Part shown: piece after piece, positions 18,622 to 45,057 of the stretch
Position numbering within the stretch: position 1 is the first letter of the stretch
Layout of the letters: each line of letters starts with the position of its first letter
Virus record (IMG/VR): IMGVR_UViG_3300032116_000001
Span: 1-64,000 of that record
Strand: one strand, 5' to 3'
Length of the DNA: 64,000 nt
The notes under the pieces: generated by a model
Database searches by the model: none
What the model saw: the letters and a program-made list of their open reading frames with translations, nothing else
What the model was told of the DNA's origin: nothing
Program-made: the position numbers and the translations under genes

Positions 18622-19747
18622 ATGGCAACACGAGGCTGGGAGCCCACAGACTACAATCCGAACATTATTCGTGATGTTTCTAATCGAACCATTGAAGAAT
18701 TTGAAAACGATATTCGATTTTCTCGTGACTGGGGCTTCGTACAAAGTTATGGCCTTGAAAGAGCTACTCAGCTTCTGGGTCGAGCCCCAGATACCCGAGC
18801 AGTTGAATTCTTTAATGAGTTCATGTCTCAGTATTCCCGAGCCGTCGAGCTTATGGAACAGCTAGGCATCAAAAAGAAGATTCTGAAAAAATTCAAGCGA
18901 TATCCGATTGCTCCTTGTCTTTATGCTGATTTGAATGAAGAATGTAATGATGTATTGACGGGATCGAAAATCGGTGGAATTCCTGACCAGCGCCAAGCTG
19001 GAAGTGCGCTGTCTTCAAGGCAATATTGTTAGTCGCATCAAGGCAGCTTGGCCCAAGGATTCAAATGGTAAATATATGATATTCGTTGGCCAAATCAAAG
19101 TGCCTGGACACATCGTCGCTCCCTGGGATTATATCATGGGCGAGAAAATAGACAAGTATGGAAATTATGATCGACCTCTTAATGGGTTTAGCCACGGGCA
19201 GAACATTTTTGAACAAGAGCATACTTATTTAATTTTTCGCAGTGCGCATGCACCAAATTTTGGAGACATGTTCGATTGTGCGATGGTGCATTCTCGCTTC
19301 GATGCCAATGAATCGGTAAAGGAAGATAAATATATTGAGGCTGTGAAAAAAGCTATTCCGCAGTATCGCCGAAGCAACATGGAAGACAATTGTCCAATTT
19401 GGAGTGATCGGTGTCACACGCTAACTGATTACCGAGTTAGCATGACGCTTGATTTAATTCGCGACTTTGAATGGGCAGGTGGGTTTGAAGGCAATGTATT
19501 TGATTACATAGATTCGTGGAGAGAACACTTCGGTTCTTATGGCACAATTCAAATTTTTGGCGATCCAAGATCACAACAGACCCCACAGCGATTTGCTGAA
19601 ACACGCACTGTTTACCGTCCTCGAATGATGCGCCCGTGGCTTGGAATGACAGACCTAAAGCACGATTACACTTGGCAATATAATTTTTGTCACGAAGGTT
19701 TTCTGAGTGAATCAATTATGGGCAAAGTTGATGGAAGCTGTACCTAA
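18622..19747 (+). pseudogene. probable single gene split by a frameshift (18622..19032 + 18974..19747)
   Basis: One promoter, two overlapping ORFs in different frames, no clear start signal for the second. Confidence 0.45.
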
Positions 19748-19791
19748 TTAAAAATCCCCTGTTTTTCATGGGGGATTTTGATATATAAGGC

Positions 19792-20193
19792 ATGGCTGAT
19801 TATTACACCCATTTTTCCTTTGTCGTTGACGTTAAGAATCGTGAACAAGCAGACGGTTTGAAGAAAATGCTCACCCAGGCCAAAAATGAAGAGCTAAATG
19901 AAGAAACTTTGTACACTCCTTGGAGTTGTGAAACTAAGGACGATTTAACTAGCTTTTGGTTTCACTCTGATGATTGTGGTCAGGTTGATCTTATTGTTGA
20001 CATTTTGGCTAAATGGCAAGAAGACTTCAATTACGATCAGCCCATTTGTTTTGAGTGGGCGAATACTTGTAGTAAGCCCAAACTGGATGCTTTTGGTGGT
20101 GGGTCAGTTCTGATTTACAAGGGCGAAGCTCATTACACGAACACTTTTGATTGGTTGACTAAAAAGAAAGCCGAACTTGGAATCGTTGACTGA
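19792..20193 (+). CDS. hypothetical phage protein
   Basis: Promoter motif; MADYYTHFS...FEWANTCSKPKLDAFGGG. Confidence 0.75.
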   Translation: MADYYTHFSFVVDVKNREQADGLKKMLTQAKNEELNEETLYTPWSCETKDDLTSFWFHSDDCGQVDLIVDILAKWQEDFNYDQPICFEWANTCSKPKLDAFGGGSVLIYKGEAHYTNTFDWLTKKKAELGIVD

Positions 20194-20240
20194 CTAAAAA
20201 ATCCCCTGTTTTTCAATAGGGGATTTGATATATCAATTGT

Positions 20241-20375
20241 GCCAAGAAGCACTTGAAGTGCAGTCTACGGATATGCCTTATTAGGGCATGTGATTACTGC
20301 GTAGGAAGGACAGGGTGTAATGAAGTACGGTCGCGACGAAAAGTTACATCGGGTTAAAATCCCAACTTGGCACCA
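20241..20375 (+). ncRNA. 135-nt tRNA-like RNA
   Basis: GCCAAG/CTTGGC-ACCA acceptor, D-like and T-like hairpins, elongated internal arms, own promoter. Confidence 0.6.
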
Positions 20376-20397
20376 AATTGAAAAATGAGAATCTAAT

Positions 20398-20698
20398 CGG
20401 GGCGTGGCGAAATGGCAGACGCAGGGGACTTATAAAATGAGCACTTGTTTGTGAAAGCTGCAAGTGAATGCAATCAAATTCGGTGAAACCTTAACAGTTA
20501 GGCTGATGGCAATACCGAGCCAAGCTAACTCAAAACAGAGTTAGAAGGTGTAGAGACTAGATGGTTGCTGCCTAAGTCGAAAGATATGGCAAAGGTATAG
20601 TCCAGACCACAAAATCCTTTGGGATCGTAGTGAAAGCTATAGTGGTATGAAAATCCCTTAGTAGCAATACTGTGTGGGTTCGAGTCCCACCGCCCCGA
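20398..20698 (+). tRNA. tRNA-Leu (TAA) interrupted by a group I intron
   Basis: Exons 20398-20431 and 20650-20698; joining them restores GGGGA-CTT^AAAA-TCCCT. Confidence 0.92.
20432..20649 (+). mobile_element. group I intron (tRNA-Leu UAA type, IC3-like), 218 nt, no ORF
   Basis: Inserted after the U of the anticodon, ends in G; P AAATTCGGTGAAA, Q AATACCGAGC, R GTAGAGACTAGATGG, S AAGGTATAGTCC. Confidence 0.9.
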
Positions 20699-20748
20699 TT
20701 AGGTTATATATTGATTACTAATGCGCTTTGTGTGCTTTTAGTATAAGA

Positions 20749-21246
20749 ATGTTTGTGTCACGTTTGCAAAAATATACCCTAGAGGAGATAAAAGAAATAA
20801 TATCTAAATCAAAATCTTATGCTGAAGTAATTCGATCTATTGGTTTAATTCCTGCTGGTGGAAATTACAAAACATTGCAAAGTTTTGTACATGAATACCG
20901 AATTGATACTTCGCATTTTCTGGGCTCAGCTTGGGGGCGAGGAAACCAATTGGATTATCTCCACAATAGCAATAGAAAATCATTAGAAGATGTTTTTTCG
21001 GGAAAAGTAGCTTATAAATCAAGCCATAAATTAAGGCTTCGGCTGATTAAAGAAGGATATTTTGAGCATAAATGCTATAAATGTGGACTAAAAGAGTGGC
21101 AAGGACACGAAATACCCTTGGAATTAGAGCATATAAATGGAGATCATTGTGATAACAGTCTCGAAAACCTCATTATTCTTTGCCCCAACTGTCATGCTCA
21201 AACAGAAACTTATGCTGGTAAAAACAAAAAAAGACGATTAGGTTAA
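20749..21246 (+). CDS. HNH homing endonuclease
   Basis: CYKCG...LELEHINGDHCDNSLENLIILCPNCH. Confidence 0.9.
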   Translation: MFVSRLQKYTLEEIKEIISKSKSYAEVIRSIGLIPAGGNYKTLQSFVHEYRIDTSHFLGSAWGRGNQLDYLHNSNRKSLEDVFSGKVAYKSSHKLRLRLIKEGYFEHKCYKCGLKEWQGHEIPLELEHINGDHCDNSLENLIILCPNCHAQTETYAGKNKKRRLG

Positions 21247-21286
21247 AAATCCCCTAAATTTTTCTTCAGATTTCGATAAATTAATT

Positions 21287-21535
21287 ATGATCGATGACAA
21301 AAGAACTTCAGAATGTGTTATTCTTCATATTGAAGTTGATGTTGAGTACCCTGAAGGAATGCATCTTGGGGTTGTTCTATCTGGTTTGCAAAACAATGCG
21401 AAAATTGCCATTACTGAACTTGATGACGATAGGGTCCAAATCACAGCAAATAGAATCACAGCAGTTGAACATTTTGTTACTGGAGAAATTTTAGAAGATT
21501 ACCAGTGGAAAAAGAAAAAAGAATCTCCTCGATAA
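21287..21535 (+). CDS. hypothetical protein
   Basis: Promoter-like motif upstream. Confidence 0.6.
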   Translation: MIDDKRTSECVILHIEVDVEYPEGMHLGVVLSGLQNNAKIAITELDDDRVQITANRITAVEHFVTGEILEDYQWKKKKESPR

Positions 21536-21539
21536 ATGT

Positions 21540-21623
21540 GCCGCAGTGGTGGAATGGTAGACACGGCAAGCTCAAACCTTGCTGCCGAAAGGCGTGAAGG
21601 TTCGAATCCTTTTTGCGGCACCA
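21540..21623 (+). tRNA. tRNA-Leu (CAA)
   Basis: Cloverleaf, GCAAG-CTCAAAC-CTTGC, CCA. Confidence 0.95.
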
Positions 21624-21691
21624 TATTTTCACATATGCATGACTATGTGAAAAATCCCCTGTTTTCTCTTTCTTGATCGGATATATAAATC

Positions 21692-22321
21692 ATGTTTAAT
21701 ATGAATGTGATTCTTTTCAAGAACAATTCTATCGAAGAAAATTATCTTTTCTCTGGTGAAAATTCTGAAGATGTTGCGAAAAAGGCAGAAAGCAAAATGA
21801 TTGAAATTCTTCGTTCAGAAATGTCTAACTTTGACGAATACACGTCGGAAGATATTGACAACATTTTGGAAGATGGATATGAATCCTTTGGAAATGGAGC
21901 GGTTTTTATTACGTGGCCTGACATTGTTGATGTTGATAAGGAGATTGATTCGGAAAATAATTTTGTTTTTCGTGGCACTATTGAATACTCCATCCCGCAC
22001 ATTGATTCAGAAGTAGTTCGCCTGTGCGCCGCACTAAATGAGCCCATTGAAGTTGGTCTACAGTGGGAATCACATTATCGCAATGGTAATGGCTACGCTG
22101 TCCGCGTTAATGCAGATATCTACTCAGTTGATGAAGAACTTGCTGCCGAGGAATTTAGTGATTATTGGGATTCAGGATGCGATGATGAAATTCGCTATTC
22201 TGGGGACTACAATTGGTCCCTTTTGGGCAAAGACTATAAAGAGGCCATCAGTATTCTCCAAAAGTATGTTGATGAGCAAAAGCGTCGTTACCCAGGCTAC
22301 GATATTAGAATTAGCAAATAA
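21692..22321 (+). CDS. hypothetical two-domain protein
   Basis: Promoter motif; C-terminal half resembles 11482..11904. Confidence 0.75.
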   Translation: MFNMNVILFKNNSIEENYLFSGENSEDVAKKAESKMIEILRSEMSNFDEYTSEDIDNILEDGYESFGNGAVFITWPDIVDVDKEIDSENNFVFRGTIEYSIPHIDSEVVRLCAALNEPIEVGLQWESHYRNGNGYAVRVNADIYSVDEELAAEEFSDYWDSGCDDEIRYSGDYNWSLLGKDYKEAISILQKYVDEQKRRYPGYDIRISK

Positions 22322-44113: not shown

Positions 44114-44199
44114 TGGGTCTTAGGCGAATTGGTAGAGCCGCCTGTCTTTGGAACAGGACTCCTGAAAAGGTGGAGGTTCGAATCCTCCCGACCCAGCCA
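44114..44199 (+). tRNA. tRNA-Gln (TTG) with enlarged variable arm
   Basis: CCTGT-CTTTGGA-ACAGG; GCCA end. Confidence 0.88.
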
Positions 44200-44271: not shown

Positions 44272-45057
44272 GTGATTCAAACTTCCAATAAGAAAACAAG
44301 AGTAAAGCGCAGTCGAATTTGGACGATGCCTAAAGACGAGTTCGCTCAACTAGTGGCCTCAAGTCAAACTTATGTCGAAATTCTCCGAGCCATTAACTAC
44401 ACCATACGAGGAGGAGCTTTTCGAATTTTAAAAGAACGAATTGCGACAGAAATGATCGACGATTCACATATATTAAAGAATGGAAGGCAAACCATTTATG
44501 CCCATAGATTCAATACTCGGTCAGATGACGATATATTTTGCGAAAATTCTACATACAATAGTGGCCCTGCCCTGAAAAAGAGAATGATTAAGCTAGGCTT
44601 ACCTGAAGAATGCACAAAATGTGGGCTTGGTGCAACATGGAATGATGAACCTCTATCTCTGCAAGTAGACCATATCAATGGGGTGCGCAACGATAACAGA
44701 TTAGAGAATTTGAGGCTTCTGTGCCCAAATTGTCATTCTCAAACCGAAAATTTTGCTGGCAGAAAGTTGAACGCAAAAAACAAATCATGTCCAGAATGCT
44801 GCGCTAAGATCAGTGGATACCGTAAAGATCAGAGATGCCAATCTTGTGCCAATAAGATCAGGTCTAGAGAAATGCAACTAATATCAAAACCATCAAAAGA
44901 CGAGCTTCAAGATATGTTGTGGAAAATGCCCGCGACTAGGATTGCTAAGATATACAATGTGTCCGATAAAACAGTTGGTAATTGGGCTAAATCCTACAAA
45001 ATTGACAAACCGAGCCGTGGACACTGGGTCAAAAAAAATACTCCCCCCCCCTTGTAG
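44272..45057 (+). CDS. HNH homing endonuclease with C-terminal zinc-finger/HTH
   Basis: LQVDHINGVRNDNRLENLRLLCPNCHSQT; ATRIAKIYNVSDKTVGNW. Confidence 0.9.
   Translation: MIQTSNKKTRVKRSRIWTMPKDEFAQLVASSQTYVEILRAINYTIRGGAFRILKERIATEMIDDSHILKNGRQTIYAHRFNTRSDDDIFCENSTYNSGPALKKRMIKLGLPEECTKCGLGATWNDEPLSLQVDHINGVRNDNRLENLRLLCPNCHSQTENFAGRKLNAKNKSCPECCAKISGYRKDQRCQSCANKIRSREMQLISKPSKDELQDMLWKMPATRIAKIYNVSDKTVGNWAKSYKIDKPSRGHWVKKNTPPPL

What the first reader, a model, noticed from the sequence alone, without database searches (positions are those of the whole stretch)
20398..21246. Phage tRNA-Leu(UAA) with a cyanobacterial/plastid-type group I intron and a free-standing HNH 50 nt downstream
The 218-nt ORF-less intron is at the classic U^AA anticodon position, with recognisable P/Q/R/S elements. 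The adjacent HNH gene suggests collaborative homing, where the intron disrupts the target of a neighbouring free-standing endonuclease. Splicing would be required to produce the tRNA for TTA codons.
Basis: partly seen in the sequence, partly recalled or inferred. Interest (0 to 1): 0.65.

Follow-up and report, generated by a model that had tools for sequence, protein, structure and literature searches.

The report
Phage tRNA-Leu intron with linked HNH
A 379-kb freshwater phage carries a leucine tRNA gene split by a small self-splicing-type intron, followed by a mobile nuclease gene whose relatives cluster beside or inside this same kind of tRNA gene in many phages. This shows that intron-bearing tRNA genes, once thought absent from phages, are common there.

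Summary
Window 20398-20698 (+) is a tRNA-Leu(UAA) gene split after U34 by a 218-nt ORF-less group I intron (20432-20649). It scores 58.2 bits on Rfam RF00028 (cut-off 50) and is called by ARAGORN in intron mode. It has a U.G pair at the 5' splice site and a terminal G. In 20 phage homologues, 48 of 73 predicted pairs show compensatory changes. An intact 165-aa HNH gene (20749-21246) follows 50 nt downstream.

The intron shares the cyanobacterial insertion site and architecture, but it groups with other phage tRNA introns, and the same site is occupied in many bacterial phyla.

Relatives of the HNH are strongly tied to tRNA(UAA) genes. Of the 80 closest IMG/VR homologues, 38 lie just downstream of intronless copies, 9 downstream of intron-bearing copies and 6 inside the intron. 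The cassette shows presence/absence polymorphism, inserted 0-15 nt past the tRNA end. Identical HNH proteins sit beside both intron-bearing and intronless genes, so the intron is not needed for the nuclease to reside there. Trans-homing or hitchhiking fits better than strict collaborative homing.

Metatranscriptome contigs cover the intron and break at the predicted 5' splice site. No ligated-exon contig was seen. No cleavage site is known.

The parts
20398..20431 (+). tRNA-Leu(UAA) 5' exon: acceptor 5' strand, 3-bp D stem, anticodon stem 5' strand, C32 U33 U34
   Evidence: Sequence; ARAGORN intron mode; acceptor, D and anticodon stems covary in 20 homologues
20432..20649 (+). 218-nt ORF-less group I intron of IC3-like architecture
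   Evidence: RF00028 58.2 bits against a cut-off of 50; no ORF of 40 aa or more; consensus fold with 48 of 73 pairs compensated
20429..20441 (+). P1 hairpin: C20429-G20441, U20430-A20440, U20431.G20439 (5' splice-site wobble pair), A20432-U20438, loop 20433-20437
   Evidence: RNAalifold pairs at columns 34-37/48-51; the U.G pair is invariant in 20 of 20 sequences
20442..20466 (+). P2 hairpin (CACUUG ... CAAGUG)
   Evidence: Sequence; the equivalent helix covaries in the alignment
20470..20475 (+). P3 5' strand (GCAAUC), pairs with 20563-20568 (GGUUGC)
   Evidence: Columns 81-86/174-179; 5-9 sequences per pair have changes on both sides
20480..20549 (+). P4-P5-P6 domain: P4 20480-20485/20513-20518; P5 20489-20490/20508-20509 with a window-specific L5 insertion; P6 20519-20521/20547-20549; P6a 20525-20531/20538-20544
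20555..20559 (+). P7 5' strand (GACUA) within the invariant block GUGUAGAGACUAGA ('R'); proposed partner 20598-20602 (UAGUC) within AAGGUAUAGUCC ('S')
   Evidence: Both blocks are invariant in the 20 sequences. The pseudoknotted helix is read by eye. With no variation, covariation cannot test it
20569..20591 (+). P8 hairpin with GAAA tetraloop (20579-20582)
   Evidence: Columns 180-189/204-212 covary
20606..20648 (+). P9 region with a second GAAA-capped hairpin (20630-20641)
   Evidence: Columns 227-271; pairs 252-255/260-263 have 4-10 double changes
20649..20649 (+). Terminal G of the intron (omega-G) before the 3' splice site
   Evidence: G in 20 of 20 aligned homologues
20650..20698 (+). 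tRNA-Leu(UAA) 3' exon: A35 A36 A37 A38, anticodon stem 3' strand, long variable arm, T arm, acceptor 3' strand, A73; no encoded CCA
20749..21246 (+). Free-standing HNH endonuclease gene, 165 aa. An N-terminal helical domain is followed by a Cys4 HNH domain (residues about 109-149, nt 21073-21195)
   Evidence: phrog_10822 E = 7e-49; invariant C109, C112, H128, N140, C145, C148, H149; AF2 model with mean pLDDT 84; residues 91-162 are 54% identical to BF23 hegA/F-TflIV
44272..45057 (+). Paralogue of the HNH (38% identity; ATG at 44326) with a C-terminal extension. It lies 70-125 nt downstream of a long-armed tRNA with anticodon UUG (44114-44199). A third paralogue lies outside the window at genome 315374-315802, downstream of tRNA-Pro(UGG)
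   Evidence: tblastn on the genome; ORF list; translations

Best explanation
Two separable selfish elements share one phage tRNA gene.

(1) The intron. The phage's only tRNA-Leu(UAA) gene is interrupted between U34 and A35 by a compact group I intron. The intron must excise itself by the usual two-step route: attack by free guanosine at U20431|A20432, then ligation after G20649. Only then is a functional tRNA for UUA/UUG made.

(2) The HNH gene. The HNH gene 50 nt downstream belongs to a clade of free-standing homing-endonuclease cassettes whose home is the 3' flank of tRNA(UAA) genes. I infer that the enzyme nicks or cuts tRNA(UAA) loci lacking the cassette in co-infecting relatives. Recombinational repair would then copy the cassette in. 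Because the intron lies less than 100 bp away, it can be carried along (trans-homing, mobE-like), but it does not have to be.

The intron is not required as self-immunity for the nuclease. Over evolutionary time the same HNH clade has repeatedly moved into the intron itself, creating composite mobile introns.

Shown here: the anatomy, the conservation and covariation of the intron, intact HNH motifs, the cassette polymorphism and its recent transfer among homologues, and the three genomic configurations.

Inferred: splicing activity, nuclease activity and its target, and mobilisation of the intron.
For: Intron:
- RF00028 scores above its cut-off, and ARAGORN calls the gene in intron mode.
- The U.G pair and terminal G are invariant. 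48 of 73 consensus pairs show compensatory change across 20 phage homologues.
- Intronless homologues carry an uninterrupted CUUAAAA loop at the same point.

RNA:
- Contigs from three freshwater metatranscriptomes cover 20248-20417 and 20432/20434/20435 onwards to 20590, 20657 or 20704 by run. They do not cover the flanking ORFs.
- None bridges 20431|20432. All three break within 0-3 nt of the predicted 5' splice site.

HNH:
- phrog_10822 at E = 7e-49. The catalytic and zinc-binding residues are intact. It is related to the T5/BF23 tRNA-region nuclease F-TflIV.

Link to tRNA(UAA):
- Of the 80 closest IMG/VR homologues, 38 lie 39-69 nt downstream of intronless tRNA(UAA). Nine lie downstream of intron-bearing tRNA(UAA), 6 lie inside the intron and 3 lie just upstream.
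- The link recurs in unrelated backbones: this 379-kb phage, the 595-kb LR756511, and contigs that carry T4-like late-promoter motifs.

Mobility:
- In three lineages the cassette is present or absent at a point 0-15 nt past the tRNA end. One example is a 749-bp cassette inserted 4 nt after the tRNA.
- L136 and L139 share a 97-100% identical cassette. The right flank is 65-80% identical, and the tRNA on the left is different.

Intron invasion:
- The HNH ORF occurs in the P6 loop in sense (L127), in the P6 loop in antisense (L140, L142, L115), and in the P1/P2 region (L076, L105, L157; L129, L159 and L181 are also intron-borne, with the ORF starting 84-95 nt into the L159 and L181 introns).

Precedents:
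- Trans-homing and collaborative homing (PMC2790892, PMC3984707). SegB and F-Tfl nucleases in phage tRNA clusters (PMC2330249).
Against: - No contig with ligated exons was seen, so exon ligation is not shown.
- The window phage has no close relative in the collections searched. Cassette mobility is therefore shown for homologues at 40-53% identity, not for this copy.
- The window's HNH is placed with weak support in the protein tree, near its own paralogues.
- The L136/L139 pair shows the cassette moving without the neighbouring tRNA or intron. Co-conversion of the intron is therefore not obligatory and may be rare.
- 18 of the 80 homologues have no tRNA within 160 nt.
- The window copy lacks the TATAAATA hairpin that precedes many homologues.
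- No RNA contig covers the HNH ORF.
Confidence: 0.55

Rival explanations
1. Strict collaborative homing. [quoted passage not shown] The intron interrupts that site and so protects the carrier genome. Intron and HNH spread as a pair.
For: - An ORF-less intron with an adjacent free-standing nuclease is the arrangement described for S-PM2 psbA/F-CphI and Aeh1 nrdA/MobE (PMC3984707, PMC2790892).
- The HNH clade is found beside tRNAs of two different body types that share mainly the CUUAAAA anticodon loop.
- The same clade has entered the intron at least three separate ways. This is what the model predicts as its end point.
Against: - 38 of the 47 homologues lying downstream of a tRNA(UAA) are next to intronless genes with an intact anticodon loop.
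- Identical HNH proteins sit beside intron-bearing (L136, L137) and intronless (L139) genes.
- Starred (well-supported) branches of the HNH tree force at least 8 changes each of the intron-bearing and intronless labels.
- Paralogues in this same genome sit beside intronless tRNA(UUG) and tRNA-Pro genes.
Confidence: 0.2
2. Two independent residents with no interplay. The HNH family simply populates phage tRNA clusters, as the T5 F-Tfl enzymes do. The intron is an unrelated, mostly vertically inherited or separately transferred ribozyme. Their adjacency here has no consequence for either element.
For: - The cassette moves without the tRNA or intron in the L136/L139 pair.
- Many intron-bearing tRNA(UAA) genes have no HNH nearby. 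Examples are Atu_ph07, LR756501 and about 40 IMG/VR loci.
- Paralogues lie next to other tRNAs.
Against: - Nine intron-borne HNH genes, in three configurations, show repeated physical interaction between the two elements.
- The intron lies within about 100 bp of the cassette insertion point. That is far inside the co-conversion tracts of up to 2 kb reported for T4 homing (PMC2790892).
- 72% of the evaluable close homologues are tied to one anticodon class.
Confidence: 0.2
3. The interrupted gene is a dead tRNA. The intron no longer splices, and the locus is a decaying remnant.
For: - No ligated-exon RNA was seen.
- The Rfam score is only 8 bits above the cut-off.
- P1 has only four pairs.
Against: - All core blocks invariant in the 20 homologues are intact in the window.
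- Helices are maintained by compensatory change.
- The exons fold into a complete type II tRNA with A73.
- RNA contigs end at the predicted 5' splice site in three runs.
- Low Rfam scores are typical of this compact class. The homologues in LR756501 and Atu_ph07 fall below the cut-off.
Confidence: 0.04

Closest known systems
[quoted passage not shown] 1990 and Kuhsel et al. 1990, as cited in PMC3984707)
   Same: Same gene, same insertion point (CUU^...G^AAAA), ORF-less, compact IC3-like core, short P1 next to the anticodon stem.
   Different: Encoded by a phage. Shorter, at 218 nt against 220-312 nt in the cyanobacterial loci fetched here. Falls outside the cyanobacterial clade in the intron tree. 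Followed by a homing-endonuclease gene.
Group I introns of bacterial tRNA genes outside cyanobacteria (Azoarcus tRNA-Ile, Agrobacterium tRNA-Arg; the 21 types in Williams 2020, bioRxiv 10.1101/2020.01.27.920355)
   Same: Same ribozyme class and anticodon-loop location. tRNA-Leu(UAA) introns were found here in at least nine bacterial phyla.
   Different: Those are chromosomal. That survey covered bacterial and archaeal assemblies, not phages.
Collaborative homing: cyanophage S-PM2 psbA intron with F-CphI, and Aeromonas phage Aeh1 nrdA intron with MobE (PMC3984707, PMC6083498)
   Same: [quoted passage not shown]
   Different: The host gene is a tRNA, not a protein-coding gene. The nuclease is an HNH enzyme, whereas F-CphI uses an Endo VII-type motif. 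Most relatives of this nuclease live beside intronless targets, which does not fit the strict model.
Trans-homing of the T4 nrdB intron by MobE (PMC2790892)
   Same: An HNH free-standing nuclease whose nick outside the intron insertion site mobilises a neighbouring intron by co-conversion. This is the best mechanistic analogue for the data here.
   Different: No experimental cross or nick mapping exists for this system.
Homing endonucleases of phage tRNA clusters: T4 SegB (GIY-YIG) and T5/BF23 F-TflI, F-TflII, F-TflIV (HNH) (PMC2330249, PMC10644984)
   Same: Free-standing nuclease genes sit between phage tRNA genes. SegB recognises a conserved tRNA-gene element. The window's HNH domain is 54% identical to BF23 F-TflIV over residues 91-162.
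   Different: No intron is involved in T4 or T5. The N-terminal half of the window protein is not shared with F-TflIV.
Intron-encoded endonuclease of the cyanobacterial tRNA-fMet intron (Bonocora and Shub 2001, cited in PMC3984707)
   Same: A nuclease carried in a tRNA group I intron and specific for the anticodon region. It is comparable to the intron-borne HNH relatives found here.
   Different: A different nuclease gene in a different tRNA, and it is bacterial. The window's own intron carries no ORF.

Membership tests
Group I intron (Rfam RF00028) | Covariance-model score at or above the curated gathering score | tested here: met
   58.2 bits against 50, at 20421-20624
Group I intron (Rfam RF00028) | U.G wobble pair at the 5' splice site in P1, and a terminal G before the 3' splice site | tested here: met
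   U20431.G20439 and G20649; both invariant in 20 of 20 homologues
Group I intron (Rfam RF00028) | Conserved core helices P3-P9 supported by covariation | tested here: met
   P2, P3, P4, P6, P8 and P9 have compensatory changes; 48 of 73 pairs overall
Group I intron (Rfam RF00028) | P7 helix with the guanosine-binding site | tested here: inconclusive
   Both strands are present and invariant. With no variation there is no covariation test, and RNAalifold cannot draw the pseudoknot
Group I intron (Rfam RF00028) | Splicing: 5' cleavage and exon ligation | tested here: inconclusive
   RNA contigs from three runs break at 20432-20435 and none bridges the 5' splice site, but no ligated-exon contig was found. 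In vitro self-splicing cannot be tested with these tools
Cyanobacterial/plastid tRNA-Leu(UAA) intron lineage | Insertion between U34 and A35 of tRNA-Leu(UAA) | tested here: met
Cyanobacterial/plastid tRNA-Leu(UAA) intron lineage | Phylogenetic placement within the cyanobacterial intron clade | tested here: not met
   The cyanobacterial introns form their own clade (SH-aLRT 100, branch length 0.55). The window lies outside it in a polytomy with phage introns (quick tree, window on a long branch)
HNH (His-Me finger) endonuclease | Catalytic His, Asn, His and two CxxC zinc-binding pairs | tested here: met
   H128, N140, H149, C109/C112 and C145/C148 are invariant in 34 sequences
HNH (His-Me finger) endonuclease | Significant profile match | tested here: met
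   phrog_10822 at E = 7e-49 and 11 further HNH PHROGs. Pfam HNH_3 is below its cut-off, at 16.7 against 24.8 bits
HNH (His-Me finger) endonuclease | Beta-beta-alpha-metal fold | tested here: inconclusive
   The AF2 model (mean pLDDT 84) has strands 125-128 and 141-144 followed by helix 146-150. Most of the top Foldseek PDB matches are HNH proteins (McrA, Cap5, Cas9 HNH), but none reaches E <= 0.001; the best is E = 0.04. There is no PDB sequence match
Free-standing homing endonuclease cassette | Presence/absence polymorphism at a fixed site among related genomes | tested here: met
   Met for homologues in three lineages. Not testable for the window's own copy, because no close relative of this phage was found
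Free-standing homing endonuclease cassette | Signature of recent transfer: a near-identical cassette in diverged flanks | tested here: met
   L136 against L139: 97-100% identity across the cassette, 65-80% in the right flank, and a different tRNA on the left
Free-standing homing endonuclease cassette | Site-specific cleavage of cassette-less alleles | not testable with these tools
   Needs purified protein or phage crosses
Collaborative homing (free-standing nuclease plus ORF-less intron) | The nuclease target coincides with the intron insertion site | not testable with these tools
   No cleavage data exist
Collaborative homing (free-standing nuclease plus ORF-less intron) | Carrier genomes are protected by the intron, so the nuclease gene should co-occur with the intron | tested here: not met
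   38 homologues lie downstream of intronless tRNA(UAA) genes against 9 downstream of intron-bearing ones. Identical proteins occur beside both

The most novel reading that the evidence does not exclude
Phage tRNA(UAA) genes may be a battleground for interference between co-infecting phages. On this reading the HNH clade damages rivals' tRNA-Leu(UAA) loci. Group I introns (and cassette insertion) serve as shields that are repeatedly gained, lost and merged with the nuclease. Intron-bearing tRNA genes would then be a widespread, so far unannotated feature of phage genomes, including cultured jumbo phages.
Probability: 0.2. Interest if true: 0.8.

Novelty: new variant of a known kind. Interest (0 to 1): 0.62.

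Why it matters
A 2014 review stated that every group I intron then known in phages sat in a protein-coding gene, despite the many phage tRNA genes (PMC3984707). I found no later paper in the held library that reports one in a phage tRNA.

Here a single capped scan found about 60 viral contigs with intron-split tRNA genes. Unannotated examples also turned up in cultured jumbo phages: Agrobacterium phage Atu_ph07 (tRNA-Leu) and Klebsiella phage RCIP0023 (tRNA-CAU). Standard tRNA and Rfam annotation therefore under-counts both phage tRNAs and phage introns.

One nuclease clade is found beside intronless genes, beside intron-bearing genes, and inside the intron in three configurations. This gives a natural series for asking how free-standing nucleases and ORF-less introns fuse into mobile introns. 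It could be tested in culturable phages.

Tried and rejected
- Close relatives of this phage, to find an empty site. blastn against 50,697 phage records gave only short core matches. Relatives of the upstream ORF (five IMG/VR loci at 29-37% identity) hold no tRNA-Leu, intron or HNH.
- Solved structures. No PDB sequence match and only weak Foldseek matches.
- Promoter and terminator scan of 20100-21700. Nothing above the shuffled expectation.
- Rfam at permissive thresholds on 20150-21300. It added nothing beyond the intron.
- Ligated-exon RNA. Not seen in Logan contigs of three metatranscriptomes. Contigs are a poor probe for an 83-nt modified tRNA.
- Inferring the nuclease target from comparison alone. 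The insertion point and the shared anticodon loop point in different directions, so I left this open.
- Literature search for phage tRNA introns. None found. This is absence from the held library, not proof of absence.
- Not used: the large protein searches, because family scans and tblastn were sufficient, and complex prediction, because no protein-protein claim is made.
- Not done: I did not build or search a joined-exon sequence. The mature tRNA was judged from ARAGORN's intron mode on genomic DNA and from exon-wise alignment.
- No alternative genetic code was applied.
Full report
**What the window is.** The window is the first 64 kb of a 378,848-bp IMG/VR virus record with 40.6% G+C. ARAGORN with introns allowed finds 36 tRNA genes in the genome, 16 of them in the window. 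The exact sequence around the finding occurs in freshwater metagenomes and in some labelled 'fungus metagenome', across 13 studies.

**The observation.** Reading 20398-20698 gives a type II tRNA:
- acceptor stem CGGGGCG/CGCCCCG and A73;
- a 3-bp D stem;
- anticodon stem GGGGA/UCCCU;
- a long variable arm;
- T arm GUGGG-UUCGAGU-CCCAC.

The anticodon loop C-U-U|A-A-A-A is split after U34 by 218 nt (20432-20649).
- ARAGORN's default mode misses the gene. In intron mode it calls tRNA-Leu(taa) with a 218-nt intron.
- Rfam RF00028 matches 20421-20624 at 58.2 bits against a gathering score of 50. It is the only such match in the genome.
- No ORF of 40 aa or more lies within the interval.

- About 60 of these are tRNA genes with a 190-220-nt intron in the anticodon loop. 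Most are tRNA(UAA) with the same CUU^...G^AAAA junctions. ARAGORN's 'Tyr(ata)' calls are the same arrangement shifted by two bases. Some are tRNA-Met(CAU), Asn, Gln and Tyr.
- I aligned 20 diverse pre-tRNAs (A1). RNAalifold recovers the four tRNA stems plus P1, P2, P3, P4, P5, P6, P8 and the P9 hairpins. 48 of 73 pairs show changes on both sides.
- The U.G pair at the 5' splice site and the terminal G are invariant.
- The 'R' and 'S' blocks that form P7 are invariant too. They are present, but covariation cannot test them.
- Intronless homologues of the same tRNA bodies carry an uninterrupted CUUAAAA at this point.

**Is it 'cyanobacterial/plastid-type'?** Only in part. One scan of bacterial genomes with the J6/7-P7-P3' block found 120 loci.
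- At least 50 are tRNA-Leu(UAA) genes split at the same position.
- They occur in Pseudomonadota, Acidobacteriota, Bacteroidota, Vulcanimicrobiota, Verrucomicrobiota, Chloroflexota and other phyla, as well as Cyanobacteriota.
- In a quick maximum-likelihood tree of 117 introns, the cyanobacterial tRNA-Leu introns form their own clade (SH-aLRT 100). The window intron sits outside it, in an unresolved group with other phage introns. Its best identity is 72%, to L133. The window is on a long branch, so its exact position is unsure.

A preprint had already extended bacterial tRNA introns to 21 types across phyla (10.1101/2020.01.27.920355). That work surveyed bacterial and archaeal assemblies, not phages.

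**The HNH gene.** ORF 20749-21246 encodes 165 aa.
- It matches phrog_10822 (HNH endonuclease) at E = 7e-49. The Pfam HNH_3 match is weak.
- In an alignment with 33 homologues, the invariant residues C109, C112, W117, H128, N140, C145, P146, N147, C148 and H149 are all present.
- An AlphaFold2 model has mean pLDDT 84. It shows an N-terminal helical domain, a disordered linker at 64-74, and a C-terminal two-strand-plus-helix unit.
- Most of the top Foldseek PDB hits are HNH proteins, but none is significant. There is no PDB sequence hit.
- tblastn against phage records gives 240 records. One is BF23 hegA, annotated as H-N-H endonuclease F-TflIV, at 54% identity over residues 91-162. Several hits lie next to annotated tRNA genes.
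- T5's F-Tfl nucleases and T4's SegB are known homing endonucleases located in phage tRNA clusters (PMC2330249; PMC10644984).

**The HNH clade is tied to tRNA(UAA) genes.** The genome has two paralogues, both just downstream of tRNA genes. One is at 44272-45057, after a long-armed tRNA with anticodon UUG. The other is at 315374-315802, after tRNA-Pro(UGG).

The 80 closest IMG/VR homologues (40-51% identity) break down as follows:

| Context | Count |
|---|---|
| 39-69 nt downstream of an intronless tRNA(UAA) | 38 |
| Downstream of an intron-bearing tRNA(UAA) | 9 |
| Inside a tRNA(UAA) intron | 6 |
| Just upstream of a tRNA(UAA) | 3 |
| Downstream of tRNA(UUG) | 4 |
| Beside other tRNAs | a few |
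| No tRNA within 160 nt | 18 |

Of the 78 homologues that can be evaluated (two lie at contig ends), 56 (72%) are tied to a tRNA(UAA) gene.

The link recurs in unrelated backbones:
- this 379-kb phage;
- the 595-kb uncultured phage LR756511;
- contigs whose cassettes carry a TATAAATA motif, which resembles a T4 late promoter (that resemblance is from my own knowledge).

**Cassette mobility.**
- In lineage A, contigs with the HNH (L045, L070, L075) align with contigs lacking it (L019, L038, L060) up to 4 nt past the tRNA end. They align again after a 749-bp insertion.
- Two other lineages show the same pattern within 2-15 nt of the tRNA end.
- L136 and L139 share a cassette that is 97-100% identical from the tRNA 3' end to about 40 nt past the stop codon. 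The right flank is 65-80% identical. The tRNA on the left differs: a type II body with the intron in one, and a 73-nt class I body without an intron in the other.

This is the signature of a recently transferred free-standing homing-endonuclease gene. It also shows the cassette moving without the intron.

**Intron-borne copies.**
- In LR756511 the tRNA-Leu(UAA) intron is 700 nt long. It carries an HNH ORF, 43% identical to the window's, in the P6 loop. The ORF's TAG stop lies inside the conserved GGUGUAGAGAC block.
- In IMG/VR the ORF is found in the P6 loop in antisense orientation (L140, L142, L115).
- It is also found in the P1/P2 region in sense orientation, where the P4 motif lies downstream of the ORF (L076, L105, L157). 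L129, L159 and L181 also carry the ORF in the intron in sense, starting 84-95 nt into the L159 and L181 introns.
- In the HNH tree these copies fall in several places. Parsimony needs 4 changes for the sense copies and 3 for the antisense copies, and well-supported branches force at least 2 for each.

Collaborative homing has the free-standing nuclease cut at the intron insertion site, so the intron protects the carrier. Trans-homing has it cut nearby, with the intron carried along by co-conversion (PMC2790892; PMC3984707).

Three findings argue that the intron is not the clade's means of self-protection:
- Most homologues sit beside intronless tRNA(UAA) genes.
- Identical HNH proteins sit beside both forms.
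- Starred (well-supported) branches of the HNH tree force at least 8 changes each of the intron-bearing and intronless labels.

Two findings still argue that the two elements interact:
- The insertion point is at the tRNA 3' end. Everything in the tRNA gene is within about 100 bp of the cassette, well inside known co-conversion tracts.
- The HNH has repeatedly invaded the intron.

I therefore favour two separable elements sharing a locus, with opportunistic trans-mobilisation. The strict model stays as a live rival, because the only feature shared by all the neighbouring tRNAs is the CUUAAAA loop.

**RNA evidence.** Three freshwater metatranscriptome runs hold parts of the stretch. Their Logan contigs lie on:
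- 20248-20417 (X18);
- 20434-20657 (X18);
- 20432-20704 (X19);
- 20435-20590 (X20).

The same runs show nothing on the ORFs at 19700-20235 or 20705-21700, except for a 34-nt conserved HNH motif that comes from other organisms. DNA contigs from run X1 cover everything. No RNA contig bridges 20431|20432.

In X19 the contig continues upstream of 20432 into 162 nt whose last 29 nt match the same phage at 313252-313280, with one non-templated G at the joint. That is what reverse-transcriptase template switching would give at the 5' end of a G-capped intron-3'-exon intermediate. A rearranged variant genome is not excluded.

This is suggestive of cleavage at the predicted 5' splice site. It is not evidence of exon ligation.

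**Literature.** The 2014 review says all phage group I introns then known were in protein-coding genes. Searches of the held library found no later report of one in a phage tRNA.

Cultured phages carry them unannotated:
- Atu_ph07 has a tRNA-Leu(UAA) with a 278-nt intron, under a stretch partly annotated as a hypothetical protein.
- Klebsiella phage RCIP0023 has a tRNA(CAU) with a 231-nt intron. It lies in an unannotated gap and scores 104 bits on RF00028.
- Compact introns such as those of LR756501 and Atu_ph07 fall below Rfam's cut-off. This helps explain why they are overlooked.

**Limits.**
- No alternative genetic code was used.
- Both trees are 'quick' trees with long branches.
- IMG/VR contigs are predicted viruses.
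- All statements about splicing, nuclease activity and target are inferences.

Noticed in passing
window 20239-20380 (+): A tRNA-like structured RNA of about 140 nt lies just upstream of the tRNA-Leu gene. It has a 7-bp acceptor-like stem (UGCCAAG/CUUGGCA) followed by an encoded CCA, a D-like hairpin, a long interrupted arm and a T-like hairpin (GGG-UUAAAAU-CCC). MFE is -46.6 kcal/mol, z = -3.25. It has no Rfam match. A metatranscriptome contig covers 20248-20417 exactly.
   Followed up: partly
window, 31 copies between 4817 and 59501 on the + strand (e.g. 20197 and 21245): The intergenic motif AAAAATCCCCT recurs 35 times on the + strand of the genome, almost all in the first 60 kb. It often overlaps the stop codon of the preceding small ORF. 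Two copies bracket the unit formed by the tRNA-like RNA, tRNA-Leu and HNH. It is probably a regulatory signal of an early-gene region.
   Followed up: no
genome G000:C1 294691-294858 (outside the window): Two adjacent tRNA genes with anticodon CUA (amber suppressors, called 'Pyl' by ARAGORN). They raise the possibility that TAG is read through in part of this genome. No alternative code was applied here.
   Followed up: no
window 44114-44199 (+): An 86-nt tRNA with a long variable arm (type II body, Leu/Ser/Tyr-like) but anticodon UUG (Gln), with an encoded CCA. An HNH paralogue (44272-45057) follows it and runs 10 nt into tRNA-Arg(UCG).
   Followed up: partly
genome G000:C1 313113-313281, and window 20432: A second long tRNA-like RNA (11-bp terminal stem TACGTTGTGCG/CGCACAACGTA, with T arm). 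In metatranscriptome run X19 it is joined through one extra G to the exact first base of the intron. This could be a chimeric cDNA, a variant genome or a trans reaction; it is unresolved.
   Followed up: partly
L019:2742-3013, L033:1303-1577, L099:1511-1784 (-), L107:8698-8971, L044:11077-11347; intronless form in L139 at about 2365-2437: 73-nt class I tRNAs (short variable arm) with anticodon UAA carry the same intron at the same site as the type II tRNA-Leu genes. The same HNH clade follows them. Their amino-acid identity is unclear.
   Followed up: partly
L329:1253-1614 (Agrobacterium phage Atu_ph07, MF403008) and L328:1414-1721 (Klebsiella phage RCIP0023, OR532817): Unannotated intron-split tRNA genes in cultured jumbo phages. 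Atu_ph07 has a tRNA-Leu(UAA) with a 278-nt intron. RCIP0023 has a tRNA(CAU) with a 231-nt intron after the anticodon. Neither has the HNH in the 3-kb stretch fetched around the tRNA.
   Followed up: partly
L140:2311-3066, L142:2325-3087, L115:1300-2073: HNH ORFs lie in the P6 loop of tRNA(UAA) introns, but on the strand opposite to the tRNA. This is an unusual antisense arrangement for an intron-borne endonuclease gene.
   Followed up: partly
L021, L024, L058, L075, L070, L120, L136 (the 40-60 nt between tRNA end and HNH start): HNH cassettes in these contigs begin with a conserved hairpin (GGTAAAC ... GTTTACC) that encloses TATAAATA just before the ATG. It recalls the late-promoter-in-hairpin control of T4 endonuclease genes (a resemblance from memory). 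The window's copy lacks it.
   Followed up: no
L148, L161/L162, L199/L201 (HNH ORFs): Five HNH homologues have one in-frame stop codon. They may be decaying copies or come from recoded genomes; this was not examined.
   Followed up: no
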